Source: Girardia tigrina
Lineage: Eukaryota
Assembly: GCA_001938485.1 (NCBI GenBank)
Contig: MQRK01220918.1
Span: forward strand, 1 to 64,000
Length of the DNA: 64,000 bases
Direction of reading: 5' to 3'
Position numbers and translations under genes: made by a program. This document shows positions 51 to 51,756 of this stretch, in pieces (positions within the stretch are counted from its first letter, which is position 1; each line of letters begins with the position of its first letter). The notes below the pieces were generated by a model. It worked only from the letters and a program-made list of their open reading frames with translations, searched no databases and was not told where the DNA came from.

Positions 51-58
<8 letters not shown>

Positions 59-1164
59 AAATGTTATGTATTATGGTTGCTGTAACCCTGATATTTTTGA
101 TGGTTGATGTCTAGGTTTAGCTACTTTAACAGATCATGTACATGTTATGTATAATGTCTATGCATGTTTTAAATACTATAGGAGTTTTATACATGTAGAT
201 AAAATAGAAGGTTATATATCTTGGTTATGGTAACCATGGTACTTGTGATTGATGATGAGATTAATTGGGCGATTCATTAGGTATTGTATGATGGTAGACA
301 ATATACATATATCATATGGGTTTCAGATATATACGACAAAATTGATTTTTGAGCACTTTTTTGATAATTTCAGAAATGTTCGAAAAAATCGATTTATCAG
401 CACTTTTTCGAAAATGTTGACATGGAATCTGAATGCACGTATATGGATAACTATTCAAGTGCATGAGCACTTTTTTGATATTCTGCTTCCTTCTGTCTCT
501 AAAATCGATGTGTATTTTGTGTAAATTTGCACATTATGTTAATTATAGGGAAAAATAATCAATATATGAAATTTCTAATTGCACATTCAAATAAAGAATC
601 AAAATGTGCATTAAACACATAATATCTATTTTTGACACTGGTACTTTTAAAAAATGTAATGTATTGATTTTTACACTTTTGCACATGTGCAACTTAAAAA
701 GCACTGTGCTAGCACATTAGAAATGTGTGGCAAAATGTGCTCTATCGATTAGCACTTTAAAAATATCGATTAGCACATCTGGGCAGTGTGCAGTAATCGA
801 TTAGCACTTTTTTCTACGGTCCTTAGTGATAGGGTCACGGTTGCCATTGATACGGTAACTGTTACCATGGTTACAACCGCCTTGAACCATTGTATCCGTT
901 ACTAATGAAAAACATCCCTTGGTTACCGTTGCTATGGTAACGAAGACCATGGTTACCGTCACCAAGTGAACCAGAACCGTTGCTATGGTAACCGGAATAG
1001 TTGCTAAGGCGTCAGGAACCAATCAGAACCGTTGCTAATGAACCGCAAACCAATCAGAAGCGTTTCCAAGTGAACCGGAAACGTTGCTATGGTAATCGCG
1101 ACTGTTGATATGGCAACGGGCTACCACCCCAGGAGGGTGAGGGAGAACATACATTTTCCCCCTA
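51..1164 (+). mobile_element. Unclassified non-coding repeat module, copy A (X-box array, GC hairpin, ends ...cattttcccccta)
   Basis: Aligns by eye with 2690-2890 plus 3376-3524, with the reverse complement of 10937-12860, and with 13692-14420. Confidence 0.8.
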
Positions 1165-1810
1165 CTTGATATCAAAAAGCAGCCGCTCTTCCATCAGAGC
1201 TCGAATGTATACACACATCATCAACCCCGTCTGTCCTCCATTCCGCACCAGCTGATGTGGCTGCACAAATACATTTATTCTCATTTCTCTTTTTGTGAGA
1301 CACAACCATTTATATTGCGCCCATTCCTCCTTCTGGTGTGTGAGGAATATTTGGTGTGTTGATGTTTTTGTGTAGTTTTTGCATGTTTAAATGCTGTGTG
1401 TTGATTTGGGATTGTGCCTCTCCTAACCAGATGGATTATCGATATTTAATTTCTTATAATCTGAAACTAATTTATTTAAATTTAGATTTAATATTCAAAT
1501 TTTTATCTGGTCGGCCTTTGCGAACAACTCCTGGATAGTCTGTCCGCGTTCTGCTCTTTGTTGCTCTGTATTCATCTGCCAATGTAGAGGATCATTAATT
1601 CTTGCATTATTATCGAATTTCATTATTTATAATAATTAAAATAATCATTGAAACGCAGCAAAATATTTATTTTTCAGTTAAACGGAATCAAGTTAATTGT
1701 CTAGGTCCAGATATTGGAGCCACTCGCACTCGCCCCTCATTTGACCCTGCTGCTGCATCACAACGAAGTGCCTATAGCAAGCACAAAAGTCGTAGTTTTT
1801 TCGGTTGCAG

Positions 1811-2071
1811 TCACAATCGCAGTTCATCGAGCGCTCCTTTGATTTGATGGTTAAAAACTCCGACTTCGTACGCCATGACATTTCCCTCGCTGTGCGTCTC
1901 CCATCGCGATTTTAATTCCTCCACTTGTCTCTGCAAATCTCTTCTCTGGAAGACTATTCTTGTGGCAGCACGTATTTGTTCCTCTATTTCAACCGTTTCT
2001 TTATTCCGCTCCATCTGTTTCACGACAGTGATCGGCTTCTCCTTTTTTGCATTCATACTAAAAGGTTTCAT
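1811..2071 (-). CDS. Small coiled-coil-like ORF in cargo 1, possibly frameshifted into the Cys-rich ORF 1693-1881
   Basis: 86 aa with charged heptad-like sequence (EIEEQIRAATRIVFQRRDLQRQVEELK), higher GC than flanks. No recognised homolog. Confidence 0.3.
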   Translation of the reverse strand: MKPFSMNAKKEKPITVVKQMERNKETVEIEEQIRAATRIVFQRRDLQRQVEELKSRWETHSEGNVMAYEVGVFNHQIKGALDELRL

Positions 2072-2689
2072 TAAACGACATGAATCTATAGTGTTACAAT
2101 ATAAATCATATACTTTAATTTACTTATCATAATTAGATCTCATATATTTTTATTCACAAGATTTTTAATCGATTTGGGGCGGGACGGCCGCTTTCAGTGA
2201 TATCCCGACTGAGTCCCAAAAATGTCACGACCCTTCTGACACAACGACGTACGGGGACATTCGCTGATGCTGGGTATTCGGCGATATTACTATTATGTAT
2301 ATGTATTGTGATATTACTATTAAATATATGTATTAAAATGTCTATGCCTCCTTTTCTTCCTTTCTGTGAATTATGTTTTATATTATATTACTACATTAAT
2401 GTATGATAATGTATAAATGTGTTTCAACCGCAACAATGTGCAAATATAAATATGACAAACTAAAAGCGATACCAAAAAAACATTACTTGTATATATCGTG
2501 AACATCGTTCACATTGCGCTTATAAAAGGTGTTTAGCGTTGTGTCAAAATTATATTTCAATGAAATAAATGTTTATTAAATTTATTGTTTGTTTTAATGT
2601 ATAACTTTAAATAAATAAAAAAATTGAATAAAATAAACTCTGAAAAGGTATGTAGATGTTGACCCCCTGGGGGGTCTTGTGGTGTATAA

Positions 2690-3524
2690 AGCCTATGCAC
2701 GTGTTAAGTACAATAGGAGTTGTATAGATGTAAATTTTACATATAATATAAAAGGTTATGTATCTTGGTTACATTAACCATAGTACTTGTGATTGTTGAT
2801 GGGGTACTTTAGGCGATTTATTAGGTATTGTTTGATGGTAAACAACATACATTTATCACATGGGTTTCAGATATATACAAAAAATTATTTTCCAATGAAT
2901 CTATGAAGCCTAGTCGTTTGAAAAAACATATGCAGATTATACATGTTGATAAGAAGGATAAGTCAATTGAATATTTTAAGAATCTTAAGAGAAATTTCTA
3001 AAACAATTAGCAATTTCTTCAATGTTTAAAAGAGCAAGTGGGAAAGTTGATGATGGTTTGAGTGCCTCAAATAGTATTGCAGAAATTATTGCTAATGGTA
3101 TTGTTCAAAGGTGTATTGATGAGATGGTTGATGATGTTAAGCTACACCTTCTTGAAAAACTCCAACCAAAAAATTTTCTCTATAGATTGATGAGTCAACT
3201 TTATCAGACAACTCTGCTTTAGTACTTGGCTATGTAAGATATTTTGATGAAGATTTTAGCTTAAAAGAAGAGCTGTTGTTTGCTGAAACACTAACCTACG
3301 TTACTAAAGGAGATACTGTATCTATTCTGGTGAAAACATTTTTCATTAAAATGATATTCCTTTAATGAACATAATGAACCGTTGCTATGGTAACCGGAAC
3401 CTTTGCTAAGGTGATCGGAAAGGTTGCTATGGTAACTGGAACCGTTGCTAAGGTAACCGTGACCGTTGCTATGGCAACGAGGTACCCCCCGAGGGGTTAG
3501 TCCAGAACTCTCATTTTCTCCCTA
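2690..3524 (+). mobile_element. X-box module copy B, middle replaced by a hAT fragment
   Basis: 2690-2890 matches ~160-350. 3376-3524 matches the X-box array and end of copy A. Confidence 0.75.
2890..3365 (+). pseudogene. hAT (Buster/Charlie-type) transposase fragment
   Basis: Translates to SNESMKPSRLKKHM..H..KKDKSIEYF, NGIVQRCIDEM, IDEST, YVRY, EELLF; stops and frameshifts present. Confidence 0.8.
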
Positions 3525-3595
3525 ATCACTCTCAACTTATTTTTTAAGAGATTTCGATTAGACTTACGTAAGTAATTACATAATCATTCATTTAC

Positions 3596-3627
3596 TATAT
3601 AAAAGCAATAAAATGAACATAATCAGT
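3596..3627 (+). promoter_or_regulatory. TATA box plus TCAGT initiator-like core promoter
   Basis: TATATAAAAG at 3596 and TCAGT at 3623-3627, with its A 29 nt from the TATA start. Mirrored in the right arm. Confidence 0.5.
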
Positions 3628-3670
3628 GATCTGATGATGACGGTTAAACCGTCGAAATATAAAATATCAA
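3622..3670 (+). ncRNA. Hammerhead ribozyme-like core (type I, Penelope pLTR style)
   Basis: CTGATGA-t-GACGGT(taa)ACCGTC-GAAA-tataaaatatc: conserved core boxes and a perfect stem II. Stem I/III register is imperfect. Confidence 0.55.
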
Positions 3671-3792
3671 AAAATATTTTTAAATGGCGTTAATTTGTTT
3701 TTATTATTATATAACTATGACAAATTAATATAAAATAATAAAAATTAATATAAAACAAATATTCAAAGAATGTATTCACAAATTAAAATATT

Positions 3793-4716
3793 TTATTCGT
3801 CTCCAAATTGTTGATTATATAAATATTTCATTATTAATAATTGTTTCTCGACATTTTCTATCGTATTCTTCCACAATTCTCTATTTGATCCCGACTTTTT
3901 AATTGTTTCTTCGATTTCTATTTCGTATTCCTTTACTCTTTTATCTTTCTTTGAATTACAATCCGAAGATTTATTTTCGATAAATGTTTCCATATTTGTA
4001 CCATTCTCCTCCATTTCAACATCCATAAGATCTGTTTCGATCGGTTCATTGTTTGAACCAGTTAATAAATTTGTGGAATTAATATTGTTTGAAATATTTT
4101 CATTATTTAATTCTGGCAAATTATCGTAAGTATTGTTTGGATGAAATTCTTCGATTATTTCGAAATTCATTTCTTCATATTTACTTTCATTATTACCTTC
4201 ATTATTACCTTCATTATTACCTTCATTATTACCTTCATTATTATTATTTGAACACCATTCATTTATATTCTCTGAAAGGTCAATAATTTCGAAAACCTCA
4301 TTCAAATTTGTTTTCATTTCTTTTTCATCTATTTGATGAGAATCACTATCGGAATAATTTATATTTTTTTGACTCCTGGTCTTCTTCGAACCTTTTACCC
4401 AATAATGTACTCGTGGAATAGTTACATTAAACAACTTTGATATTTCCGTCAGTGATTTTCCTTCTTTATATAGTTTTATTGCTTCAATTCTTTCATTTTT
4501 AAGTTTTATACGGTTATGTTTAAATTGAGTAGGCTTATTTGTTTGTTTTAATTGAGATGTATATTGCTGGATATGTAAACCATGTTTATTTAATAAATAT
4601 AGAAGAGTATTTTTTCCCAATCCTAGAGATTTTTGAATCTCTTCAAAACTTTGACCTTTTTCAACTAATTCTTGGACTTTGGTCGTCACTGTTGACTGAT
4701 TTGCAGTATAAACCAT
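3793..4716 (-). CDS. Twin helix-turn-helix protein with acidic NNEG repeat and C-terminal coiled coil (307 aa), copy 1
   Basis: Intact intronless ORF in very AT-rich DNA. HTH-like motifs VQELVEKGQSFEEIQKSLGLGKNTL and AIKLYKEGKSLTEISKLFNVTIPRVHYWVK. No DDE domain. Confidence 0.75.
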   Translation of the reverse strand: MVYTANQSTVTTKVQELVEKGQSFEEIQKSLGLGKNTLLYLLNKHGLHIQQYTSQLKQTNKPTQFKHNRIKLKNERIEAIKLYKEGKSLTEISKLFNVTIPRVHYWVKGSKKTRSQKNINYSDSDSHQIDEKEMKTNLNEVFEIIDLSENINEWCSNNNNEGNNEGNNEGNNEGNNESKYEEMNFEIIEEFHPNNTYDNLPELNNENISNNINSTNLLTGSNNEPIETDLMDVEMEENGTNMETFIENKSSDCNSKKDKRVKEYEIEIEETIKKSGSNRELWKNTIENVEKQLLIMKYLYNQQFGDE

Positions 4717-5611
4717 TATAAAAATAAACCATTATAAAAATCGTAAATGCAACATGATTAAAGTTTAAATTATAATAATATTTTCTCCTTATTTTATTGG
4801 ATTAATAAAATAAATTATCAAAAAAATTGTATAAATAATTTTTAAAATAATTATAATTTTGCCTTTCTCAGAGACGGTAAGTACTCATAAACCGTTTTTA
4901 TTATTTTTTCGTCAAACGTCTCTTATATGACTTCGTCCATTTTACAATGACTAAATTATGATTTATATTAATTTTGATTTGATCTTTTTATTTCGACATT
5001 CGAAAATATACTATTCACTTTTATTTTAAATTTTTAGTTTCGAAAAAATCTTCATAGACGATTTTTATTTTTATCATAAAATTCGTTTTCTTATATTTTA
5101 AAGATTTTTAAAATTTATTGAGAAATATTACTTTTTATTTAGACATTCGAATAATAATTTTTATTAAATTAATATTTTTACTTATACTTAAAAATTAGAA
5201 AATGTATACTATACTTAAATTACAATTACGTTACATTATTTTTTCGTTAAAATATTTCTTTATTTTATTTCTATGAGGAATTATTTAATTTTCATTTCGT
5301 ATATAAATTCAGAATAAAATAATTTAAATTAAATTATATTTCTAAACCTCTAATTTAAATAACAATTCCATAATAAAATATTTTAAAATTATTTTGAAAA
5401 ATATTATTAACAAGATTATATTAATATTTTTAAATACATTATTTATAATTAAATAAATCTTTGCATTACAATACATTAAATCCCTTTCAAATAGATTTAA
5501 AATACTATTTTAAAATTACCGGTTTTCTCCGAAATTAAAACCACTCAAAATAATTAAAAAATTGAATTATTTTCAAAATTTAAAATCTAAAAATAAGACC
5601 GGTCTTAAAAT

Positions 5612-5655
5612 TTATTTTTGTAATTAATTTCGGTGGATTACTCGCAATCTTCAGA
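5612..5655 (-). ncRNA. Minimal hammerhead ribozyme in a Penelope pseudo-LTR
   Basis: Minus strand reads TTTTGT-CTGAAGA-ttgcgagtaatccacc-GAAA-TTAA-TT-ACAAAA: perfect stem I, palindromic TTAA stem III loop, degraded stem II. Lies downstream of a GIY-YIG 3' end. Confidence 0.65.
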
Positions 5656-5975
5656 CAAAATTTTCACTGGCTTTTTGCAGCTTATATATGAGAAAGGTGA
5701 TTTTGAAATCAATCATGTAATAAAGGCTCTATTTGAAAATGTTTAACAGAGAAGTTGAGTGTGAAGCTTGAATATTAATTTTTGGATCCATGGATCTTAT
5801 TAATAAGGCCTCACACATTACTCTCTCCCAGTAATTTTTAAATCGATTACACAGAATTTTAAAATCATTTTCTCCGATTTTCTTTTTACATTTTACAAAT
5901 TATAACCCACTTGAATCAAGGTATATTTTATCGATTTCTTATTCAGAGGGTTTTAAACATTTAAAATCATCAATT

Positions 5976-6365
5976 TTGAAAAGTTTGATCCCAAATAACA
6001 TGAATCTAAAAATTATTTCCCAATCATATAAAATTTGTGATATGTTCAGTAATAAATCTCCCACTCCTCTCGGTTTGTGCTCTGATCTTGTTTATAAATA
6101 TACATGTAATGGGTGTAATGCCACATACATTGGAGAGACATCTCGTCATCTCTGCAAACGGATCAAAGAGCATAGTCGGTTGGGTAATGGGAGCAATATT
6201 GCCGAACATAATTTAAAATGTAAAAAGAAAATCAAAGAAAATGATTTTAAAATACTGTGTATTCGATTTAAAAATTACTGGGAGAGAGTAACGTGTGAGG
6301 CCTTATTAATAAGATCCATGGATCCAAAATTAATATCCAAGCTTCACACTCAACTTCTCTGTTAA
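5976..6365 (+). pseudogene. Penelope-type GIY-YIG endonuclease fragment
   Basis: LVYKYTCNGCNATYIGETSRHLCKRIKEH...EALLIR. A 1-nt frameshift near the end relative to the inverted copy. Confidence 0.85.
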
Positions 6366-6703
6366 ACATTTTCAAATAGAGCCTTTATTACATGATTGAT
6401 TGCACAATCTTAATTGCACAATTTTAATTATAAGTCTTTATTTAATTTATTTATAATGACGTTTTAAGTTTTTGTTTTGAGAAATACTGAATTTTATTTT
6501 CAGTTATGCTACGTTTTTTTATTCAAAGTTATCCCCAGTTTTCTAGTGACAAAAAAATCTCGGGAAAAGGTTGTGAAAATTCCCGTTTCCTGGGATGCTG
6601 AATATGGCTGGGAAATGGAAGCTCTAGTAGAGATGTCTTTTACCAATATTTCTTTTTGTATTAGATATTGTTAGGGAATTAAATACAGTTGATTACAAAT
6701 TAA

Positions 6704-7098
6704 TAACGGATAACATGAAATAGTAGGACACCTACTATTTTAATAGTAGGTGGAAAAAAAATTGAAAAGGCGCCCAATATTGGTTTACACCTACTATTTG
6801 GTGCTTTTGTTTTNNNNNNNNNNNNNNNNNNNNNNNNNNNNNNNNNNNNNNNNNNNNNNNNNNNNNNNNNNNNNNNNNNNNNNNNNNNNNNNNNNNNNNN
6901 NNNNNNNNNNNNNNNNNNNNNNNNNNNNNNNNNNNNNNNNNNNNNNNNNNNNNNNNNNNNNNNNNNNNNNNNNNNNNNNNNNNNNNNTACACCTACTATT
7001 TGATTCCACCTACTATTTTAATAGTAGGTGGAAAATTTTTTGAAAACTTCATTACACCTACTATTTCATGTCCACCTACTATTTGATGTTATCCGTTA
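6704..7098. mobile_element. MITE-like element with TIRs and internal cacctactattt repeats (spans an N gap)
   Basis: TAACGGATAACAT...ATGTTATCCGTTA terminal inverted repeats. Confidence 0.7.
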
Positions 7099-9659
7099 AT
7101 TAAAAGAATAAACGTAATTTAGTAACACTAAAAATAGAGTAAATAATTGAATTATTTCAATAGAATTATCAAAGATCAAAATTTTTATGAATGCGAGGAG
7201 ATAAAATTTTGATTCTTCTGTTTTTTTAATTAACCACTTTTATCTTTTATTGAAGCGACCTTAAAGATAATTAATATTTTTCTTGTCCCAATCACTGTAC
7301 CAGTTCCTTTTTTGCGTTCTAAAATTTGATAAATTAATTTATGAGTAATCTCTTTTACGATTAAAATGTTTTTTAAGTTACTAAATTCTACAAGTAATTT
7401 TCTTGTTCTTAAAAATATTTTACAAATATGTTTATTTGATTTTTCTTTTATATTAATCAAGAATGAGATAATCAATGACGAAAATATAATAGTTGGAAAG
7501 AATGTATTGCCGGTATATATTTTTTAAGACTTTTATTATTATATTTCTTTTTTTAACCCAATTTTGAAATTTCTTTTCTGTCTTTTATTTAATATAATTT
7601 TATTTATTTTTTAAATATAAACAAAAGTTACAAAGAAATTTAAATCGCAACTTTAAGATAATTAAAATTTATTATGCTACTCAAAAATATTTCTTCGTTA
7701 TAATCATTTATTATTATTAATGAAAGAATAACAAAGTAATGTTTTTCATAAAACATTTATTTTATATTTACAATGTTTAACAATATTCAAATTTAGAATA
7801 AAATTAAAATTATCATAAAGTCATACTTTTACTCAAATTTTAAACATTAGATTTCCCAAAGATCTCATACAAATTTTGATAATTTAAAACTTAAAATATT
7901 TTAATTCATCATTTTTATTAAATGTTTTATACATTCAATATATGTTTTTTCCGAAATAACAAATATCACAAAATACAATTTTGATATTCTTCTCATTTTT
8001 AAAAAAAATTAATATTTTCTGACATTTATTTAAAATTTTTTAATTTGTTTCCTTGATCATAATTAAAAATTGTAATTATAAGAATAGTAAAAAGTATGTT
8101 CATTATGAGGAATATTTTTGAATGGATTATTCGCACTTTTGAAATGTAAATAACAACTTTAAAATTAAATTAATATTTTTAATACCGGTTTTCTCCGAAA
8201 TTAATATCACTCAATATATTTTAAAAAATTGATTTTTTTCCTCAAAATTTAAAATCTTAAATTAAGGCCGATTATTAATTTTAGTAATTAAGACCGGTCT
8301 TAATTTTAGATTTTAAATTTTGAAAATAATTCAATTTTTTAATTATTTTGAGTGGTTTTAATTTCCAAGAAAACCGGTAATTTTAAAATAGTATTTGAAA
8401 TCTATTTGAAAGTGATTTAGTGTATTGTAATGCAAAGAATTATTTAATTATAAATAATGTATTTAAAAATATTAATATAATCTTGATAATAATATTTTTC
8501 AAAATAATTTTAAAATATTTTACTATGGAATTGTTATTTAAATAAGAGGTTTAAAAGTATAATTTAAATTCATCAAGCAAGGAAGATGCATAACTACGAA
8601 TGTTTTGTGGAGAATTGTCCTGGAAACAATTCAATTTGTGATTTCAATAAAAATATTGGAAATAATTTTCATCTTCTTAATATTCATTAAACACAAAATT
8701 TAAACATTTATTTCCACTCCTTTCCTATTTTAATAATCAAAATCTTTTTTGTCTTTTAAAGATTAAAAAGCTATTAAATTTTTTAATATCTTTTATTTAA
8801 CTTAAAAATTCTCATTTTATTTACTTTTACTTTTATTTATCAATATTGTGTTTTTAATTGCTGTTTAACTTATTTAAAAATTTTATTTTTTTATTTTAAT
8901 CACTTTACAGATAAAGCTATTTATGTAAATGAATTTATTTATTTTAAAAATTTTAATTATGAAATTTTATTCTACTTAAATTAATAATTGGGTTCTTTTG
9001 TATTTAAAAAAATATTCATAGTAAGATACCGTACCCAGTATTTTAATTTAAATTATTTTATTCTGAATTTATATGCGAAATGAAAATTAAATAATTCCTC
9101 ATAGAAACAAAATAAAGAAATATTTTAACGAAAAAATTATGTAACGTAATTGTAATTTAAGTATAGTATACATTTTCTAATTTTTAAGTATAAGTAAAAA
9201 TATTAATTTCATAAAAATTATTATTCGAATGTCTAAATAAAAAGTAATATTTCTCAATAAATTTTAAAAATCTTTAAAATATAAGAAAACGAATTTTATG
9301 ATAAAAATGAAAATCATCTATGAAGATTTTTTCGAAACTAAAAATTTAAAATAAAGGTGAATAGTATATTTTCGAATGTCGAAATAAAAAGATCAAATCA
9401 AAATTAATATAAATCATAACTTAGTCATTGTAAAATGGACGAAGTCATATAAGAGACGTTTGACGAAAAAATAATAAAAACGGTTTATGAGTACTTACCG
9501 TCTGTGAGAAAGGCAAAATTATAATTATTTTAAAAATTATTTATACAAATTTTTTTGATAATTTATTTTATTAATCCAATAAAATAAGGAGAAAATATTA
9601 TTATAATTTAAACTTTAATCATGTTGCATTTACGATTTTTATAATGGTTTATTTTTATA

Positions 9660-10667
9660 ATGGTTTATACTGCAAATCAGTCAACAGTGACGACCAAAGT
9701 CCAAGAATTAGTTGAAAAAGGTCAAAGTTTTGAAGAGATTCAAAAATCTCTAGGATTGGGAAAAAATACTCTTCTATATTTATTAAATAAACATGGTTTA
9801 CATATCCAGCAATATACATCTCAATTAAAACAAACAAATAAGCCTACTCAATTTAAACATAACCGTATAAAACTTAAAAATGAAAGAATTGAAGCAATAA
9901 AACTATATAAAGAAGGAAAATCACTGACGGAAATATCAAAGTTGTTTAATGTAACTATTCCACGAGTACATTATTGGGTAAAAGGTTCGAAGAAGACCAG
10001 GAGTCAACAAAATATAAATTATTCCGATAATGATTCTCATCAAATAGATGAAAAAGAAATGAAAACAAATTTGAATGAAGTTTTCGAAATTATTGACCTT
10101 TCAGAGAATATAAATGAATGGTGTTCAAATAATAATAATGAAGGTAATAATGAAGGTAATAATGAAGGTAATAATGAAGGTAATAATGAAGGTAATAATG
10201 AAGGTAATAATGAAGGTAATAATGAAGGTAATAATGAAGGTAATAATGAAGGTAATGATGAAGGTAATAATGAAAGTAAATATGAAGAACTGAATTTCGA
10301 AATAATCGAAGAATTTCATCCAAACAATACTTACGATAATTTGCCAGAATTAAATAATGAAAATATTTCAAACAATATTAATTCCACAAGTTTATTAATT
10401 GGTTCAAACAATGAACCGATCGAAACAGATCTTATAGATGTTGAAATGGAGGAGAATGGTACAAATATGGAAACACTTATCGAAAATAAATCTTCGGATT
10501 GTAATGCAAAGAAAGATGAAAGAGTAAAAGAATATGAAATAGAAATCGAAGAAATAATCAAAAAATCGGGATCAAATAGAGAATTGTTGAAGAATGCGAT
10601 TGAAAATGTCGAGAAACAATTATTAATAATGAAATATTTATATAATCAACAATTTGGAGACGAATAA
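9660..10667 (+). CDS. Twin helix-turn-helix protein (335 aa), copy 2
   Basis: Inverted paralog of 3793-4716. The 28 extra aa equal 7 more 12-bp NNEG units. Confidence 0.75.
   Translation: MVYTANQSTVTTKVQELVEKGQSFEEIQKSLGLGKNTLLYLLNKHGLHIQQYTSQLKQTNKPTQFKHNRIKLKNERIEAIKLYKEGKSLTEISKLFNVTIPRVHYWVKGSKKTRSQQNINYSDNDSHQIDEKEMKTNLNEVFEIIDLSENINEWCSNNNNEGNNEGNNEGNNEGNNEGNNEGNNEGNNEGNNEGNNEGNDEGNNESKYEELNFEIIEEFHPNNTYDNLPELNNENISNNINSTSLLIGSNNEPIETDLIDVEMEENGTNMETLIENKSSDCNAKKDERVKEYEIEIEEIIKKSGSNRELLKNAIENVEKQLLIMKYLYNQQFGDE
10134..10274 (+). repeat. 12-bp coding minisatellite (aataatgaaggt)n encoding NNEG
   Basis: Direct tandem array; shorter in copy 1 (~4186-4242). Confidence 0.9.
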
Positions 10668-10936
10668 AATATTTTAATTTGTGAATACATTCTTTGAATA
10701 TTTTTTTTATATTAATTTTTAATTATTTTATATTAATTTGTCATACTTATTTATTAATAAAAACAAATTAACGCCATTTAAAAATATTTTTTGATATTTT
10801 ATATTTTGACAGTTTAACCGTCTTCATCAGATCACTGATTACGTTCATTTAATTGCTTTTATATAATAAATGAATGATTATGCAATTAATTACGTAAGTC
10901 TAATCGAAATCTCTTAAAAAATAAGTTGAGAGTGAG

Positions 10937-13430
10937 TAGGGAGAAAATGAGAGTTCGGACCAACCCCTCGATGGGGGGTTACCCCGTTGCCATAGCAACG
11001 GTCGCGGTTACGATAACAACGGTTCCAGTTACCATACCAACGGTTCCGATTGTTAGGGTTTCAAAAAATACATGTGAACACTTTTGATAAAATTTTATAA
11101 AGGAAAATTTTTAAATAATTCTTTCAGTAAAATTATTAATTTCAAACAAAATAATATTTAGTTTAACAAAACTTGGAATAAAAAATTATAAATGTTTGTT
11201 TTACTCCATCAAAAATTATAAATATTTTAATCTTTGTTTTATCTCATCAATTTTCAAGGCTCAGGAAAATTACTATATAAACAACATCAAATCTAGTTTT
11301 AGTTGACCCAAAAATATTTGCAAGAAAATCAACCAAGAAAAAGTCGTGTTAACAAGTAAAGTGCAAACTTATTTTATTTTTACTTTATTCTTTTTTAAAT
11401 ATTAAACCATAAGTACCACGTATGGGAGAAGAGGGTTTAATATAAAATCTTTGAGTTTTAATCAAATCATCGTCCGACTTTGGAGATTCGCAGTTTTTAC
11501 TGTAACCTGTTAACTCGCACAAAATATTGATTGTGTTTGTATTCTGTCATCCAAAATTGAATTATTATTATTATTATTTGTGACTTGTCGATATTTGTTA
11601 TTTGAAATAAAGTTTGATAAAGGAATTTATGTTCATTATTCATATATTTATGTTGGAAGACCTTTCTGAATAATTGGAGTCAGATCAAAAATTAAAGATT
11701 ATTGACTGAGAATTATTGATAAAAGATTATTGATCAAAGAATAAAGAATAGAGATTTACGATTAAAGATAAAGATTAAAGATTTGTATTTTAAAAAGTGA
11801 ATAATTGAATTAAAGATAAATTTTAAATAATACCCAACACGATTAGCTTAGACAGCAACGGTTCCGAACACCCTAACATAGACAGCAACGGTGGCGATCA
11901 CCCTAGTTACGGTTCCGGCTCACTTGGTAACGGTAACCAAGTTCTTAGTTACTATAGCAACGGTAACCAAGGGATGTTTTTCATTTGCAACGGATGCAGT
12001 GATTCAAGGCGGTTGTAAAAATGGTAACGGTTTCCATACCCATACCAACTGTGACCATTTCCTTAGTAACAGAAGAAAAAAGTGCTAATCAATCTCTGCA
12101 CAGTGCCCAAATGTGCTAATCGATACTTGCAAAAAGCTAATCAATAGTGAACATTTTGCCGCACATTTCTATTGTGCTAGCACAGTGCTTTTTAAGTTGC
12201 ACATGTGCAAAAGTTCAAAAATCAATACATAAAATTTTTAAAGTACTAGTAAAAATCGATATCATGTGTTTGATGCACATTTTGATTTTCCATCTGAATG
12301 TGCAATTAGAATTTTCATATATTGATTACTTTTACCTATAATGAACATAATGTGTAAATTTACTAAACATCCACATAGATTTTATCCCTAGGCAGAGGTA
12401 CAAGGAAGCAGAATATCAAAAAAGTGCTGATGCACTTGAGTAGTAATCCATATACGTACATTCAGATACCATAAAAACATTTTTGAAAAAGTGCTGATAA
12501 ATTGATTTTTTTCGAATATTTCTGAAATTCTTAAAGAAGTGCTCAAAAATCGATTTTTTCGTATATATATGAAACCCATATGTTATATGTATGTTACTTA
12601 CCATCAAACAATACCTCATGAATCACCTAATGTATTTCATCAACAATCACAAGTACCTTGGTTACCGTAACCAAGATATATAACCTTTTATATTACATGT
12701 AAAAACTACATGTATAAAACTCCTATAGTACTTCAAACATGGATCGACACTATACATAACATTTACATAATCAGCTAAGTACCTGAGTCTAGGCATCAAC
12801 CATCAAAAGTACCTTGGTTACCGTAACCACGATACATAACCTTTTAATATTATATATAAAAACAATCGAAAACACCTTAGAAACCGTCACCCTTACCTTA
12901 AAAAACCATGAAAAATACCTTAAAAAACATCGAAAACATGTAAAAACCACCAAAATTACACAAAAAAGTGCACAAATCAATACTGCACTCGTCTGCACAT
13001 GTACTGCCTAGGCTGCACTGTGCAAATCAATACTTCACATGTGCAAGTGTGCAAAACCAATAAGTTCACAATTGTGCAAAGTGCACTATATTTATGCTTT
13101 TTATATAATAGAGCTTGGCAGAGGTCGAAGGTAGTAAGATATCAAAAATCTGTCTGAACACATGAAACCCTAGAGAGAAACCCATAGATTAATAGCCGGA
13201 ATATGATCTTAGATTCTCGAAAAAACGCACACATATGGATTATTGAGATGCTGTGTTTTATAGTGTAACGTGAGGGAGAACTCTCATACGGTATAGCCTA
13301 GGCAGGCGAAACAAGCAAAATATCAAAAATCTGTCTGAACACATGGATAGTAACTCATATGAATAGTCAGATTCAATATCACCGTTTTTGAAAAAAATCG
13401 ATACCTAGTGCTTTTTCGAATATCTGCACA
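10937..13430 (-). mobile_element. X-box module copy C (longest copy, reverse), interrupted by a solo LTR
   Basis: Reverse complement of copy A out to ~12860. Continues with diverged internal repeats (12387-12520 similar to 13113-13170 and 13297-13425). Confidence 0.75.
11051..11839. mobile_element. Solo LTR (Gypsy-like)
   Basis: TGTTAGGGT...ACCCAACA termini and 4-bp TSD CGAT. Removing it restores the X-box array. Confidence 0.8.
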
Positions 13431-13691
13431 TTATGTGTGCAAATAATATATTATAGATATGTATTATATTATGATATTATACTATGTTATCAACCAATAT
13501 CGTATCAACCATTCAAAACATGACCGTATCCAAGGGGATATCATCATACATCCATCATGTCAACGTATTGCATTCATCATATAAATGCACAACTGAACAT
13601 GTAAAAAATACAGAAAATACTGAATGATAGATAAAGATATATATATAATATATAATTTTAATATATAATTCTTTTTAATATATAATTTTAA

Positions 13692-14420
13692 GAATTTCAG
13701 AATTATTCGAAAAAATCAATTTATCAGCATTTTTCAAAAATTTTGATATTGAATCTGAATTTACGTATATGGATTACTATTCAAGTGCATCAGCACTTTT
13801 TTGATATTCTGCTTCATTGTACCTCTGCCTAGGGCTAAAATCGATATGCATTTTGTGTAAATTTACACATTATGTTCATTATAGGGAAAAGTAATCAATA
13901 TATGTAAATTCTAATTTCACATTCAGATGGAAAATCAAAATGTGCATCAAACACATGATAACGATTTTTGACACTAGTACTTTTAAAAAGTTCATGTATT
14001 GATTTTTGAACTTTTGCACATGTGCAACTTAAAAAGCACTGTGCTAGCAAATTAGAAATGTGCGGCAAAATGTGCACTATCGATTAGATTTTTTAAAGTA
14101 TCGATTAGCACATCTGGGCACTGTGCACCGATCGATTAGCACTTTTTTTCGGTTGCTAAGGAAATGGTCACGGTTGGTATGGATATGGAAACCGTTACCA
14201 TGTTTACAACCGCCTTGAATCACTGTATCCGTTGCAAATGAAAAACATCCCTTGGTTACCGTTGCTATGGTAACTAAGACCTTGGTTACCGTTACGAAGT
14301 GAGCCGGAACCATTACTGGGATGTTCGGAACCGTTACTGAGGTGATCAGAACCGTTGCTGTCTAAGCTAAGGTAATCGGAACCGTTGGTATGGTAACTGG
14401 AACCGTTGCTATGGCAATTA
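13692..14420 (+). mobile_element. X-box module copy D (truncated at both ends)
   Basis: Matches ~365-1117 and the reverse complement of copy C. Confidence 0.8.
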
Positions 14421-14506
14421 AGTTGCTATGTACATTAGGATATAAAGTAAAGTGTAAGTGTGTTAAAAAATTTGTCAGTCAGTATATCACTTGAGCAGGG
14501 ATAGTA

Positions 14507-15987
14507 CAGTCCGTGTCATAATTATCCGTACGGCCTAAATTTTTTTAAACACTATTGTAACTTGTTAGATGTTGTATAAAAAATACAAAGCACATTTATA
14601 AGTAAAGTAATTAATAAAATGTAACAGTAATTTATATTTAAGAAAAATATAGGATATTTTTATTTTCAACGTTGCATAATTATCCGTACGATATTAGAAG
14701 TACATTTTAAAGCTACAGTTCAATACTTCAGACGTTGTCCACGTTTCTCAAGTATAAGGCAAAGCCTGTAGTCATTGAATCATATAAATTATGAACTTCC
14801 TGTGCCTTTGTTTCATTGAACATACAGACAGAACTTTTTATTCGAGATTCAAGTTCGCGGAGGTTTTTTATTGCTCCATGACTATATATATCACGCGAAA
14901 GTGCGGACCATATGTTCTCAATTATATTAAGGTCCGGACTATATGGCGGCCAATCCAAAACCTCAATTTTAGAATTTTTAAAGAATTCCTTGGAGAATCT
15001 TGAAACGTGAATTGGACAATTGTCCTGTTGAAAAATAAAATCTGGACGATGATTCACTTTAATGATCGGGAATGCTTTATTTTCTAACATATCAATATAA
15101 TTTTTTGATTTTTGCTTACCTTTCAATATTTCGTACGATAATAATCCATTGGGCATTATCATACCCAAACCATTAAACCAGGAGATCTAACGACTTGTCT
15201 TACACGCATTGGTGACTGGTTCTTATCAAGCCAAGAATAAAATGAATCACAACCATGAATTGTAAACAATTTTTCATCAGAAAAAATACTTTGTTCCATG
15301 GAATACCAGTCTTTAAAAAATTTCTTGCAGCATCAACTCTTTTTTGTCGCATGCGTGGTGTACGAGTGAATTTAAAAGGTAGTCTTTTGTAATTAAAATT
15401 AAGACATTTCAGAGATCTACAAACCGTTGACTTTGATACTTCCAAGTTCAATTCTTTTATAATGTCTTGACTGGAACATTTCNNNNNNNNNNNNNNNNNN
15501 NNNNNNNNNNNNNNNNNNNNNNNNNNNNNNNNNNNNNNNNNNNNNNNNNNNNNNNNNNNNNNNNNNNNNNNNNNNNNNNNNNNNNNNNNNNNNNNNNNNN
15601 NNNNNNNNNNNNNNNNNNNNNNNNNNNNTTTTTAGCAATATTTCCAAAAGACATTCCTTCTTTTCTTTCTTTAAGAATAGCTTCTTTATCAACTTTAAAA
15701 TTCATCTAAAATAAAGCAATTGAATTACTTAATATTAATTTAAAACATTATAAATGTTAAAGCATTAAAAAAAATAATATTTATATTCGTACGGATAATT
15801 ATGCAACGGTTTAAAATTAATCTAGCTTACTCTCATAGCATTTAAACAAATATTTAAAAATAAAACATAAATTAAAATACAAACTAATTGCTAAATTTCC
15901 TATCACAATTAGAATTTATACAGGATGTATTATGATTATTTTATGACCGTACGGATAATTATTTAATAATTAAACTAACACGGACTG
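14507..15987 (-). mobile_element. Tc1-family (DD34E) transposon, IR/DR type, frameshifted transposase 14728-15705
   Basis: TA-flanked TIRs CAGTCCGTG; inner repeats ataattatccgtacg; motifs [27 protein letters not shown]. Confidence 0.9.
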
Positions 15988-16226: not shown

Positions 16227-16300
16227 GATAAAAGTGTTAAAAATTATTACATTAAAACAGTTTGAAACACGGATTTTTAACATAAAACATTTTTTTCCGT

Positions 16301-16510
16301 TCACATTCTGAAAACTCCAAACCGGGCCACGTCCTCTCCAAATTGACGATTGAAACATGCACTGAGACTTAATGCTAACACAGATCTCGTGTCTTTTGGA
16401 TCAATGATTCCATCATCCCACAATCTGGCACTAGAAAAATACGGGTGACCTTCTTCTTCATATTTAGACATGACAGGATTTTTAATTGCGGCTTCCTCTT
16501 CAATGGACAT
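16301..16510 (-). CDS. MCCC2: MCCC2 exon 12 (last)
   Basis: [10 protein letters not shown]...[10 protein letters not shown]...FGVFRM*; AG at 16512-16511. Confidence 0.93.
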
Positions 16511-18858
16511 CTAGACAGATAACGGTAGTCTAATTATACTCAATATTCTAACCAATAATTCATCTATATTTTATAATGATGTGATTAAGATTTAAAGAAA
16601 AACATTTTGAATTTGATAACTCAGGAGATAAAAACGCATTACCTCCTTTCCTTCTCTTAATCTTTGTTCTTTTTGTATTTGAACTAAAACATTAGCAGCT
16701 TGTTCTCCTCCCATAACACTTATCCTGGAATTAGGCCACATATACAGAAATCGTGGTCCGTAAGCTCGACCACACATTCCATAATTTCCGGCCCCATAAC
16801 TATTACCAATAATTACAGTAATTTTAGGGACATTCGCTGTAGCGACTGCAGTTACTAATTTTGCACCGTTTTTAGCAATACCCCCTGCTTCAGCATCCCG
16901 ACCCACCATGAATCCTATGATAAAATTATTTCAAAAACTGTTTCCGAAAAATTTAAATGTTTTTTTCGTTATCTAAGAAATATTTCCAATCTTTTAAATC
17001 CAAATCTCTAAATATCTACGGGATGTAAAATTTATAAAGTAGTTTAAATATTTGTTTAAAAATTTCCAATAAAAAAATGAAAGAACTTACAATCTTTATA
17101 ATTATTATTTACATATTTTTAATAAATTCGTTTAGAAAAGTATTTGTGAAATCAAGATTATTAAATTTCAGTATTCACTTTTTTTAAAGTTATTTGGAAC
17201 ACTTTATTTATTATTTAAAATATTGTGTTTTTTTCGTGCTGCTATTAACAGGTTTGGCTCAAAAGTTTCTGTCGATGAATAAAGCTTTCTAAAATTAGTT
17301 CTATGCATTCGCGGTTAATGACATTTTTACCAGGTACTCTTCAGTAGTTTTGTTAACAATATATGTTAAAACATTTAAAAAAACATTCAAAACATTCCTC
17401 ACACTTCTAATTCTGAAGTAAATTTAATATTAGGATGAAGGTCATTAAAGTTTTTTAATAATGGTTCTATAAGATATTGGTTTTTGAAAACAAGAATACA
17501 CATCTCTTGTAGAGTACTGAAAATTATCATTCAAAAATTGATTGGAAACCAATAAAACAATTCGGTGTTATAACAGAAGATTATTTTGGCTTGATGATTT
17601 GACGGAGTTAATGTTTTTTTCGGCGATATTTCGATTTGAAATAATTTGGCTTATTTTTGTACGATACTTTATTGATTTGAAATTTTTGTGAAACGATATA
17701 GCATATTGAATTTTAAAGATATTTTTTGAACATCAATTTGGCGATATCATTAATCGAAATTTTGTAAATCAGTTTGCCGATATTATTATACGAATTATTT
17801 GTCAAACGATTTAATAGAATTTTCTGAATAAATTAACATTTTTAAACGTTTTTTTACTTCCTTAATAAATTTTTTTAAGCGAATATTTTTGTACAAATTT
17901 TGTTTGTTCAAGTATTGTGATAATAATTAAAATATTTTGAACTTGATTATTTTGAATTTGATTTTTTAACAAATTTGAACAAAAAACTATCATGATAATC
18001 AGTCTAAATACTATAACATGGGTCCAGCACGAAATTCCTGAGAACCATGTCTCTGCTACCCCCATCTACCGTGTTACCTCGAATATTTTGCGCGCGCAAA
18101 CTAACCAAATTTTAAAAAATAATCAATTTTCTCAAAGCTTTATAAAATTATTCGAATAATTTGCCACCGTTTAGATTGCGCAGGCATATTATTTCGATTC
18201 AAACATAACAAAATGAAAAGGTTTGTAAAAACGTTTTAAGGGTAGAATCAACCGTAAAAAAGATATTATTAAAAATGATTTGATTATTTTTTTTTCAATT
18301 TTTTTCTTTTATATTTTCTATATGAGAAAATTAAAAATTTATGTAAAAAACCAAATAATTTGCACGCACAAACTATTTGGGGTAAACACAGTAGTCTTCA
18401 GGTAACCTGGAGATCGGATGAAAAACTCATTTTTAAATGAAAAAAATCTCAATTTAAAATGAAAACCTTAAATTGTCTTCTAGGAATCACCATAAAAATA
18501 AATCATATAGGGTGATGTCTCATGAAAGTAAAGAATATTTAACAAAACCCTCTCCATCCAATGCACTTGCTTGACAAAGTCTCACCAAGTAAGCATCTAA
18601 TATCACAATAGTAGTGTGAGAGTGCGCGATTTTGATGAAAATAACAATTTTCAAAGTGCTCCTTAATTTTTGGTATTAAAAACTGTTGAAGTCAGTAAAC
18701 AGGACCATTCAGTAGTATAAAAAGAACAGTTTAAAAAATCATCTTGAGTCAATAATGTAGACTATGTTGTTTGTAATTTTTTTTCATTTTGAAAATTAAA
18801 CAAATTATAATAAAGATCTAGTTTAGAATTATTTAAAGTGTGTATACATTTAGGAACA

Positions 18859-18919
<61 letters not shown>

Positions 18920-21900
18920 NNNNNNNNNNNNNNNNNNNNNNNNNNNNNNNNNNNNNNNNNNNNNNNNNNATATATATATATATATATATATTATAAGTAG
19001 AGATTTCAACTATTTGAACTTTTAAACTATTCGAATACCAAATTAAAAAATCGCAAAATATTCGAATAGTTTATCGAAAATAAAAAACGTATTAAACTTA
19101 ACAAAAAATAATAATTCTATTTCTTAAAATAAAAACAAATACATATTAATCACTTTTATTTTTAATTATATTTTCAAAAAAAATAAGTGAATTTAAGGTT
19201 TCAAAATTTAAATTGGTTCTTTTTCGGTTTTTATTGGATCCGCTGTTGAGAACAAACGTTCAATCGCTGTTGATGTAGGTCGAATTGATATCAGTGCATA
19301 ATACAGTAAGTCCAGTCTTGTCGTTCATTTCTTGAAAGAATTCAATTGTTGAAAATCGTTCTTCAGTTCAGAATAATGATCAAATACTATTTTTTGCAAA
19401 TAATCAGATTTGCCAATCTTTTATTGAACTAATCGCATAATCTATTTATTTTGCAATTCTTCATGCAGCGGTATTTCTGCTAAATCGGTATCAAAATTAG
19501 ATGAGCTCGAACTAGAACTATTGTTATGCTCCTCTTCTGTAAACGTTTTTCGATGTATCTGTTTCATAATTTCAACAGCTAAAGTATTAGCTGCATTTTT
19601 AAAGAATATGTAAAATTACAGTTCGAACGTGGTATATTGCCAGTCTCCAGATATATTAGAAGTGTCATTAAAATCGGATCTCTCCTGCCTTCTATCCTAT
19701 TTTTAAAAGTGTTTAGCAGTTTTTGGCTTACCTAAGTTTGTAGAGATTCAAATTTATCGAATAAAAAATTTATGAACTCGTTCAACTGTTAAAATATTTG
19801 CTTCATTTTTACTTAATTCAGCGACACCAGTTTCAACTGGCATGAGAACATTAACAAGACTTTGGAGTGCGATAATATTAGGTTGTCCTAAAAGTTCTCG
19901 ATCAAGAATGACAAATACAATTTTTTGTACAAGAATTTATTTTAAATAAATAACAAATAATCTTCAAAGTACAGTCCATCGTTTTCGACTACTTTCTGTA
20001 GAAACGGTCCAGCTGTTGACAATAGATCTCTACATTGATGGCCTGGCCGTTCTGAACAAACTCAAAGTTCCACCAGACGCACAACACGATTTTCAAGCTA
20101 AATTGTTTTGGAACTGAAGGTGTTGCTTGATCCGGTGGAACCCATCGCTTGTCTCGGTTGTGGTTGACCAAGTAGACCCACTTCTCGTCCGATGGCACAA
20201 TTCCTTTCCAAAACCAGTCATCTCGTGGATTCTGTAGCAATTGTCGGCAAATTTTGACTATTTTATCGACCTGTGCTTTGGTGAGTTCGTGTGGATCTTA
20301 ACATGTTTCTTGTGCACAAAGTCGAGCTGCTTCAAATGCCAATGTATGGTTGACTTGTAAACTCCAAATTGAAATGCCAAATCGCGATTGCTTGACGAAG
20401 ACTTCATGTCCAACTCTGCTTGCAAGTCATCGTTATCCAATTTTCTTGGTCGTCCAGAATGAGGACTGTCGTTCAAGTCAGAGTTGTCTTTATTGAAACG
20501 CTTGAACCAATCAATTGCCGTACTTTTTCCGATCATTTGTGTACCTTCAACTTTGCAAATTGCCTTGGTAGCATCTCGTGTTTTCAAGCCTTTCTTCCAA
20601 TAGTGACGCATCAGCACACGGATTTCAAGCTTTATAATCTTGTAGTCCATATAATGCTATAAATAAATCGATATACATCAATATCGAATAAATAATTCCA
20701 AAAAGAAATTTGAAAAAAAATTTATTTTCATTATTGACCGGGATTTTTTAGGACAACCTAATAAATCTATTAAGTATTCGAATATCAAATAGTTAAAAAA
20801 AAACAGGCAAATATATTCGAATAGTAAATAATCGAATACTTAGTTGGAATCTTTAATTATAAGTTTCATATAAATTTTAATCAATTCATTAATTTTATTT
20901 CTATACGAGTCAAATGACTTATTATCGACACCCAATATGTATAAAGTATATGTATCATATACAATAGTAGTAATTAAAAATACACTTTTTAGAATTTTGA
21001 AAAGAAAAATTAAAGTAAATAAACAGTTTTACCTGTAATATGTTGCAAAAATATTAAAGGAATTTTTCTTTGACAACATAACTGGATAAAATGAGTTCCT
21101 TTTAAAGCTGATTCAGAAAAGAGGACACCATTGTTGGCCAGAATTCCAACTGGATATCCCCAAATTCGACTAAAGCCTTATTTATAGATCATCAATTATC
21201 ATAATCGAAATCATCAAATTTATAATACTTTAAATATATTTTTGTGAAATAATTTCAAATACAAAAAATCAATATTATTAAGAACACCAACATGGGTTTT
21301 CGAACTTTTATTTACAATACAATTAGAATTGTCTTTTGGAAAAATCTCAGCAAAGCTTTCGTAAGTTGACATCGTTCTAACTTGACAAATTTTAGTTAAT
21401 GTTTTTAATAAACAATTATTCGAACAAATTTTTCATTATTTTCAGATTTTATTTTTTAAGTTCAAATTTTGTAATTTTAGTAATAATTTTATCTACATAT
21501 TAATTTTATTTAGAAAATGATTTTATGTAAAGAAAGAATATTTATTTAATTTAAAACTATTTAAAAGTTATTTAATTTATTTAAATTTTTAATATTAAAA
21601 TTTGAAATGATTTAATATTTTTAAAGTTTTTTAAAATATCTTATGCTGTACTTTAAAATGCAAATTATACTCGAATAATTATTCATCGTGAACATCCAAA
21701 ATATCAATTTTCCATGTGGGTGGGAGAAACACACATTTCCAAATATTAAACTCAACATACAAAATTCAACAAACCAATTTCAACATACCAAATTTAAAAT
21801 ATTCCTCACAAATATAAATACAAAAAAATGCTTTAAAATTAATAAATTGCAATTTCAACTGAACTACCAATTGTAGTGAAATGAAAGGTCTTTAAAGTCA

Positions 21901-24065: not shown

Positions 24066-24111
<46 letters not shown>

Positions 24112-24505
24112 NNNNNNNNNNNNNNNNNNNNNNNNNNNNNNNNNNNNNNNNNNNNNNNNNNATATATATATATAACACTCACAACATATCAATGTTTCTC
24201 CATATAATGGTTTGAATTCTTGAATTTTACTACCATCGACAATTCGGGCTATCACTTCATACATGTTAAACGTTCGCTTCAAGTTAGCTCCTACAATACC
24301 ATACAATTCATTTGCCGAATATTTCGGAGGCTCTGGTTTTTCAACAGAAATCTAAAGAAACCATAACAGAAATGTAAGGTACATCATAAATGTAATATTT
24401 TAGAAATATGTTTCTTTATCATTTTGTGATTACATTTAATCTTAGATATTGTAAATAAATTTCAGAATCAGTAGAATAATTTAGACATTTTCATTTAATG
24501 ATTTT

Positions 24506-24546
<41 letters not shown>

Positions 24547-24596
24547 NNNNNNNNNNNNNNNNNNNNNNNNNNNNNNNNNNNNNNNNNNNNNNNNNN

Positions 24597-24653
<57 letters not shown>

Positions 24654-51258: not shown

Positions 51259-51756
51259 TTTCTGTATAGGTATATATAAATATATACATGGAATTTAGCA
51301 ACCTGTTTTTTAAAGCTTTTCATTCAATCGATTTTCGTCAAACTTTGCACACTTATTCATTCTCGATGACAATAAATGATTTGGTTAAAATTTAATTGAA
51401 AAAACTTTTTCAGATCTTGAAATGGGTAAAGCGGAAAATTTGGATATATTTATGTATATATTTTATATATACCTATATATGCCATTATCATTATTTATTC
51501 AACTAATTAAATTTTTAAAACACTAAACATTTCAATAGAAGCGTGATCGACAAATAATTGATAATGAGATATAATACATTGTTTTCTACAAACGAACTGC
51601 TAATAATATATATGTCAAACAAATCAGAAGAAGTAATTTTATTCTTTCTTTTGAATATTTATAACAAAAAATATTAATTACTTTTATAAAAAATTATTTT
51701 ATGGTTTTTAAAACGGATTTCAGAAATAGGATGTTATACCTATCCCAACTTTTTTG

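What the first reader, a model, noticed from the sequence alone, without database searches (positions are those of the whole stretch)
51..14420. Modular element: conserved X-box module plus exchangeable cargo, arranged in tandem and as a large palindrome
Seen: one 1.1-2.4 kb non-coding module occurs four times (A 51-1164 +, B 2690-3524 +, C 10937-13430 -, D 13692-14420 +). A, B and C end at the same point (phased palindrome array, C/G hairpin, ...CATTTTC(T/C)CCCTA). A is followed by cargo 1 (structured segments plus an antisense coiled-coil ORF). B and C are followed by cargo 2 (TATA-Inr-hammerhead plus an antisense twin-HTH gene), which ends in a palindromic junction. In both cargos the ORF points back toward the module. 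No transposase, RT or Rep belongs to it. Inference: a multi-segment mobile or extrachromosomal system with a common region and variable payload. It is reminiscent of the common regions of multipartite rolling-circle replicons, or of Terminon-type Penelope arrays, but matches no family I can name.
Basis: partly seen in the sequence, partly recalled or inferred. Interest (0 to 1): 0.85.

Follow-up and report, generated by a model that had tools for sequence, protein, structure and literature searches.

The report
Penelope ends framing a duplicated gene
A cluster of nested jumping-gene pieces in an animal genome, in which the ribozyme-bearing ends of two Penelope retrotransposons frame an intact, unnamed DNA-binding gene that was copied once together with them; it is an unusual but explainable variant of known gene shuffling, not a new kind of replicon.

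Summary
The repeats are real, but the layout breaks down into known parts. The 'TATA-Inr-hammerhead' at the head of cargo 2 is the terminal repeat (pLTR) of a Penelope-like retroelement (PLE). It aligns with a second, previously unnoticed hammerhead pLTR at 5766-5575 (minus strand; z=12 against shuffles), which is contiguous with a GIY-YIG endonuclease remnant. The 'palindromic junction' is the tail of that second pLTR joined head-to-head to an inverted tail copy, a documented PLE signature. Cargo 2 is therefore an orphan twin-HTH gene between two inward-facing pLTRs of two PLE families (about 60% identical). It is present twice at 97.6% identity with both ORFs intact. The X-box module is a separate non-autonomous DNA-transposon-like repeat with a sharp end (Helitron-like or hAT-like, unresolved). 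C is long because of a solo LTR. B is a mosaic with a probable hAT fragment. D is truncated. Cargo 1 is single-copy and lacks a pLTR. The gap sits inside an unrelated MITE, so the big palindrome is plausible but unproven. Most likely mechanism: PLE-driven mobilisation of adjacent DNA in trans. No outside relatives were found.

The parts
51..1165 (+). Module copy A (5' end not visible; follows an AT microsatellite at the window edge); X-box-like 21-bp array at 839-1117, C/G hairpin, end CTAC then T
1166..2680 (-). Cargo 1: single-copy GC-richer DNA with an 86-aa ORF (1811-2071, minus strand), possibly exons of a spliced gene; C/G hairpin at 2661-2676; no pLTR
2683..2884 (+). B, 5' piece of the module (84-85% to A and C)
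2885..3375 (+). Broken, internally deleted fragment resembling a Buster/Charlie-type hAT transposase; identified from remembered motifs, not confirmed by Pfam or PDB
   Evidence: negative
3376..3525 (+). B, 3' end of the module (93% to C, 80% to A)
3526..3720 (+). pLTR of PLE family 1: last codons and stop (3559-3561) of the endonuclease ORF, 3' UTR, TATA 3596-3605, Inr 3623-3627, hammerhead core 3631-3657
3793..4716 (-). Twin-HTH ORF, 307 aa, with an Asn/Glu-rich linker; no close relatives
5497..5903 (-). pLTR of PLE family 2: GIY-YIG 3' end (5903-5732), TATA near 5688, hammerhead core from 5654 (helix I 6 bp, helix II decayed, predicted cut at 5622/5621), tail with an intrinsic 14-bp palindrome at 5594-5607
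5904..6409 (+). Inverted, 5'-truncated partner copy of PLE family 2 with the GIY-YIG domain (head-to-head with the pLTR above; 95% identical in the overlap)
6704..7098 (.). Unrelated MITE with 24-bp inverted ends; contains the assembly gap 6814-6987
8165..8291 (-). Inverted pLTR-2 tail variant (about 80%), starting within 6 nt of the homologous hammerhead cut site; left arm of the 'palindromic junction'
8289..9659 (+). Right-arm copy of the pLTR-2 tail and AT-rich spacer, starting about 14 nt after the predicted cut; carries a later insertion of about 470 bp (8570-9046)
9660..10667 (+). Second twin-HTH ORF, 335 aa (seven extra 12-bp repeats, in frame)
10741..10935 (-). Second copy of pLTR-1; hammerhead core has G12 changed to A
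10936..13481 (-). Module copy C, with older sub-repeats at its 5' side and an internal inverted copy of the terminus at 12373-12390
11051..11839 (.). Solo-LTR-like insertion (TG...CA, 4-bp target duplication) inside C's X-box array
13686..14418 (+). Module copy D, head-to-head with C (92.6%), cut before the terminal hairpin

Best explanation
This is a nested transposon cluster organised by Penelope-like retroelements. Shown: (1) a PLE-1 terminal repeat abuts the natural end of a non-autonomous DNA-transposon-like module and lies tail-to-tail with an HTH gene; (2) a PLE-2 terminal repeat lies about 780 bp upstream of that gene, co-oriented with it; (3) both arms begin, in the PLE-2 reading direction, with a head-to-head inverted pLTR copy. 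Inferred: the pLTR-2 promoter transcribed through the HTH gene, the inverted pLTR-1 and on into the module. That RNA, possibly trimmed at the hammerhead, was reverse-transcribed and inserted in trans by the RT/GIY-YIG protein of an intact PLE elsewhere in the genome, giving two opposite-facing copies. Later insertions (solo LTR, MITE, 470-bp piece, hAT fragment) and patchy homogenisation produced today's mosaic. The HTH protein is most likely a transposase-derived DNA-binding protein that hitch-hikes and is kept intact. The two converging promoters could also make double-stranded RNA over it.
For: Head of cargo 2 aligns to pLTR-2 at z=12 (B) and 9.5 (C), z=9 without the ribozyme core, 0 of 1000 shuffles, and is the best match outside PLE-2's own copies in the window. 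Stop codon, TATA and core are in register. Second hammerhead found 78 nt after the GIY-YIG stop; 0 comparable cores in 60 shuffles. The right arm starts 14 nt after, and the inverted copy within 6 nt of, the predicted cut site; tail homology ends 151 nt after core position A9. Published pLTRs are about 200 bp, hold TATA plus Inr and the first 12-22 codons, form head-to-head inversions with palindromes at the junction, and mobilise host genes in trans (PMC3846280). Ends fall about 110 nt into the ORF in a Poseidon element (PMC11167929). The core shows the extra base after A9 and the G10.1-C11.1 pair typical of PLE hammerheads (PMC4209133). HTH copies: no stop or frameshift among 18 substitutions, pN 0.016 against pS 0.035 (small counts).
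Against: No downstream direct pLTR and no target-site duplication for either arm is visible, so the defining product of trans-mobilisation is not shown. No RT was seen in the region. B and C differ at 16% in their 5' module parts but under 5% in cargo 2, so extra recombination is needed. The inverted tail copy is only about 80% identical to the arm it joins, older than a same-event inversion should be. Both hammerheads are damaged. A 503-bp identical run could be conversion or assembly collapse.
Confidence: 0.6

Rival explanations
1. The module is a non-autonomous Helitron that inserted into a PLE 3' end and then carried downstream DNA along by read-through of its terminator (rolling-circle end bypass). 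Cargo 1 and cargo 2 are transduced flanks and the hAT piece in B is filler capture.
For: C/G hairpin then CTA(C/A) then T at all three ends, two of them independent. CTRY ends, internal minisatellites, capture and tandem arrays are known for Helitrons (PMC6544945, PMC12001565), as are transcription-factor site arrays (PMC6927752). A second C/G hairpin closes cargo 1.
Against: The hairpin lies 22-25 nt from the end and is not significant against shuffles. No 5' TC end or RepHel was seen. The far end of cargo 2 coincides with PLE landmarks, not with a hairpin-CTRR-T end. Head-to-head inversions are not a Helitron product.
Confidence: 0.17
2. Passive pile-up: independent insertions in a transposon-rich patch, then one ordinary DNA-level inverted duplication; or two separate loci placed next to each other by the scaffolder across the gap.
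For: At least six unrelated insertions in 14 kb. No module 16-mer occurs in the other 50 kb. The gap lies inside a repeat. Identity between the arms is patchy (p=5e-6).
Against: It does not explain why the duplicate's boundary and its inverted neighbour both start within 14 nt of the ribozyme cut site. The arms are distinct sequences with different flanks on both sides, so they are not simple alleles.
Confidence: 0.17
3. One reading: integrated segments or replication intermediates of a multipartite, hairpin-ended or circular extrachromosomal element. The module is the shared origin, bound by the HTH protein, and the cargos are segments.
For: Shared module with phased palindromes, alternating head-to-head and tail-to-tail layout, an imperfect 235-bp hairpin at 8165-8400, and an intact DNA-binding ORF.
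Against: The hairpin and hammerhead are PLE pLTR sequence. No Rep, polymerase or capsid was seen. No hits in viral contigs, phages or prokaryotic genomes. Module copies are 7-16% diverged and riddled with insertions.
Confidence: 0.05

Closest known systems
Endonuclease-containing Penelope-like elements mobilising host genes (Pen3a_Av/NRPS and Pen1_Av of Adineta vaga, PMC3846280)
   Same: pLTR of about 200 bp with ORF end, TATA, Inr and ORF start; head-to-head inverted pLTR with a junction palindrome; unrelated gene next to pLTRs; AT-rich targets.
   Different: Here the gene lies between inward-facing pLTRs of two families about 60% identical. No second direct pLTR or target duplication was seen. 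The cargo is an orphan twin-HTH ORF followed by a DNA-transposon-like module.
Terminons (Athena clade PLEs; PMC6431247)
   Same: Hammerhead-bearing ends, chains of units, co-oriented accessory ORFs including coiled-coil ones.
   Different: No Athena RT, no telomeric repeat run after the hammerhead; the associated enzyme remnant is a C-terminal GIY-YIG; the locus lies beside an ordinary gene.
Non-autonomous Helitrons (HLE1; Lep1/Hel1 with CTRY ends)
   Same: Terminal hairpin, CTA(C/A) followed by T, internal minisatellite of factor-binding-like sites, captured fragments.
   Different: 5' end not seen, hairpin further from the end than usual, and the terminus also has an internal inverted copy as in TIR elements.
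hAT-family MITEs (Ac-type TAGGG ends; from my own knowledge)
   Same: Module end reads TAGGG on the other strand, has a 15/18 inverted match 660 bp inside, and subterminal repeat arrays.
   Different: No 8-bp target duplication; the same left flank travels with every copy; the transposase fragment in B looks Buster-type, whose ends differ.
Non-LTR retrozymes
   Same: Type I hammerhead of PLE origin without an RT.
   Different: Not a short tandem array; the hammerheads are single, opposite-facing and damaged; a protein gene is included.

Membership tests
Penelope-like element terminal repeat (pLTR) | Follows the 3' end of a GIY-YIG ORF | tested here: met
   Pfam GIY-YIG above cut-off; pLTR-1 aligns to the same last codons and stop
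Penelope-like element terminal repeat (pLTR) | TATA/Inr plus type I hammerhead core | tested here: met
   Both families have TATA about 35 nt before an intact core; Rfam does not detect these minimal motifs
Penelope-like element terminal repeat (pLTR) | Complete three-helix ribozyme | tested here: not met
   B lacks helix I, C lost G12, pLTR-2 has a decayed helix II
Penelope-like element terminal repeat (pLTR) | Head-to-head inverted 5'-truncated copy | tested here: met
   5699-5903 against 6409-6208, and 8165-8291 against the right arm
PLE-mobilised gene cassette | Cargo between two direct pLTRs of one family | tested here: inconclusive
   Only the upstream pLTR-2 is in the window; profile search finds no other full copy; left end may lie outside the window
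PLE-mobilised gene cassette | Target-site duplication and empty allele | not testable with these tools
   Far ends not visible; no other assembly of the locus used
Terminon | Athena RT and telomeric repeats next to the hammerhead | tested here: not met
   No RT seen in the six-frame listing of the region; no repeat run after either core
Helitron (HLE1), for the module | 3' hairpin then CTRR/CTRY then T | tested here: inconclusive
   CTAC, CTAA, CTAC each followed by T; hairpin present but not above shuffles and 22-25 nt away
Helitron (HLE1), for the module | 5' TC after host A; RepHel partner with the same ends | not testable with these tools
   No intact 5' end; none seen among the window's reading frames
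hAT non-autonomous element, for the module | Short terminal inverted repeats | tested here: inconclusive
   15/18 inverted match at 12390; 1 of 300 shuffles reached it; but it is internal to the repeated unit
hAT non-autonomous element, for the module | 8-bp target duplication | tested here: not met
   The 8-mers after A, B and C occur nowhere as left flanks
Multipartite rolling-circle replicon | Rep gene and a conserved origin stem-loop on each segment | tested here: not met
   No Rep seen in the region; cargos share no sequence; no viral relatives

The most novel reading that the evidence does not exclude
A genome-wide family of large non-autonomous cassettes driven by endonuclease-bearing PLEs, a Terminon-like chain away from telomeres. 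It would carry co-oriented ORFs (twin-HTH, coiled-coil) and an RFX X-box array, and the HTH protein would be a selected accessory factor of the cassette.
Probability: 0.2. Interest if true: 0.7.

Novelty: new variant of a known kind. Interest (0 to 1): 0.42.

Why it matters
PLE-driven copying of unrelated genes has few documented cases; one literature search for it returned a single review. A second case, with an intact orphan DNA-binding gene and boundaries that fall at the ribozyme cut site, would bear on the open question of whether PLE hammerheads shape the transposed RNA. An in vitro study found cleavage dispensable (PMC11167929). If the X-box arrays bind RFX, the module could also spread regulatory sites. 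As it stands this is one locus with two copies.

Tried and rejected
HTH homologue searches: none at full length. The domain gave only generic multi-HTH proteins at 23-46% identity; PDB and fold searches gave generic HTH matches. Two AT-rich multi-HTH hits lie on short contigs without DNA. Cargo 1 ORF: no relatives. Module DNA: no hits in viral contigs, prokaryotic genomes or phages. 7100-8165 as a third diverged cargo 2, or as a second HTH gene: not above shuffles. Rfam gave only chance histone stem-loop hits; no tRNA. A conserved ORF through the X-box array was rejected because frames differ among copies. Confirming the hAT fragment by tools failed; its pieces were searched apart and not joined. 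Host identification failed: the best MCCC2 exon hit is 99% identical in protein but 77% in DNA. Crypton was considered and dropped (no recombinase). The Terminon primary paper was not available. The gap was not filled or looked up.
Full report
Setting. The window is from an AT-rich animal genome that I could not identify. A spliced methylcrotonyl-CoA carboxylase beta gene runs on the minus strand from about 31.1 kb to 16.3 kb, and the rest is Tc1/mariner, pogo, LTR-element and other transposon debris. The finding lies downstream of that gene.

The gap. The gap at 6814-6987 lies inside a separate MITE at 6704-7098. Its 24-bp inverted ends lie on either side of the gap and an internal 40-bp repeat is in direct orientation on both sides. 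So the two sides look like the left and right ends of one element, not the same end twice. No ORF crosses the gap. This fits continuity but cannot prove it. The left block (51-6813) and the right block (6988-15482) are each contiguous, so only the large palindrome depends on the join.

The module. A, C and D share about 630 bp at 87-93%. The X-box-like palindromes are far above chance and phased at 21 bp, but they are a minisatellite. A, B and C end at the same base. C is long because a 789-bp TG...CA element with a 4-bp target duplication sits in the array. D stops before the hairpin. B is a mosaic: 200 bp of a diverged 5' part, about 490 bp that reads like a broken Buster-type hAT transposase (my recognition of motifs; not confirmed by tools), then 150 bp of end that is close to C. 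The end can be read as a Helitron end (hairpin, CTA(C/A), T) or as a hAT-like inverted terminus with a 15/18 internal partner. Neither passes all tests. The module has no copy in the other 50 kb.

What cargo 2 is. ORF 5976-6365 holds a GIY-YIG domain and has an inverted partner at 5903-5699, the usual form of a truncated Penelope-like insertion. A relaxed ribozyme scan found a second hammerhead on the minus strand at 5654, just after that inverted copy, with a TATA box before it and a 6-bp helix I. This is the element's pLTR. The first 190 bp of cargo 2 align with it over their whole length: last codons, stop, UTR, TATA and core are in register, 112 of 184 bases identical, z=12, and z=9 with the core left out. 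Homology starts at the first base after the module's end. So the 'TATA-Inr-hammerhead' is the pLTR of a second PLE family. The right arm starts 14 nt after the predicted cut site. Its inverted neighbour (8291-8165) is an 80% variant of the same tail, starting within 6 nt of the homologous site and ending 151 nt after core position A9. Published pLTRs have this size and content, and form head-to-head inversions with junction palindromes (PMC3846280; PMC8557442; PMC11167929).

The HTH gene. Both copies are intact. The predicted fold is two three-helix HTH units (mean pLDDT 71), with weak Pfam matches to HTH_23, CENP-B_N and the IS630 HTH. No catalytic domain was detected and there is no close relative in the protein collections. 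The HTH part is identical between copies; the rest shows 12 replacement and 6 silent changes and one in-frame repeat expansion. Lineage-specific, transposase-derived HTH genes without close homologues are common in invertebrates (PMC10027918), which is the simplest origin. The gene is co-oriented with pLTR-2, which explains why it 'points back' at the module.

Cargo 1. It is single-copy, unrelated to cargo 2 and has no pLTR. Its ORF is not longer than chance and has no relatives. Calling it an exchangeable cargo rests on one junction.

Mechanism. Shown: the identity of the two pLTRs, the inversions, the shared module end and the later insertions. Inferred (0.6): read-through from pLTR-2 was reverse-transcribed and inserted in trans by a PLE elsewhere, as shown for an NRPS gene in Adineta. 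Missing: a downstream direct pLTR, target duplications and further copies. Rivals are Helitron end bypass (0.17), passive pile-up with a DNA-level duplication or a scaffolding join (0.17), and a multipartite replicon (0.05).

Verdict. The feature is real and structured, but built from known parts. It works like PLE-mediated gene mobilisation; membership of the cassette class is unproven, while the two ends pass as decayed pLTRs. It is a new variant of a known kind, interest 0.42.

Noticed in passing
window 16300-31120 (-): Spliced methylcrotonyl-CoA carboxylase beta (MCCC2-like) gene, at least seven exons, with transposons in its introns.
   Followed up: partly
window 14507-15987: Tc1/mariner element with inverted ends and TA flanks, about 90 bp after the truncated module D; contains another gap.
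   Followed up: partly
window 27476-27708: Another decayed GIY-YIG PLE remnant, 53% identical in protein to the one at 6 kb; no hammerhead seen after it.
   Followed up: partly
window 33000-33840: Fragments resembling the C-terminal half of a Buster-type hAT transposase; no overlap with the fragment in B.
   Followed up: partly
window 38260-39800: Nearly complete pogo/Tc5-type transposase (HTH_Tnp_Tc5 and DDE_1) in two frames.
   Followed up: no
window 43792-44589 and 41265-41529: Ras-family reading frame spanning a small gap, with an adjacent stretch repeated in inverted orientation about 2.3 kb upstream inside Gypsy-like sequence.
   Followed up: no
window 51259-51444 and 52630-52815: 186-bp perfect inverted repeat pair about 1.2 kb apart, probably a young TIR element.
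   Followed up: no
window 8570-9046: Insertion of about 470 bp in the right arm only, flanked by an AT-rich duplication of up to 10 bp, with a short Cys-containing frame; origin unknown.
   Followed up: partly
window 4874-4882 (+): Consensus splice donor in the spacer on the strand read from the pLTR-1 promoter, antisense to the HTH gene; present in both arms.
   Followed up: no
proteins P0014 and P0037 (ENA sample ERZ27256860): AT-rich, stand-alone multi-HTH proteins with low-complexity linkers, similar in architecture to the window's HTH protein; DNA not available.
   Followed up: partly
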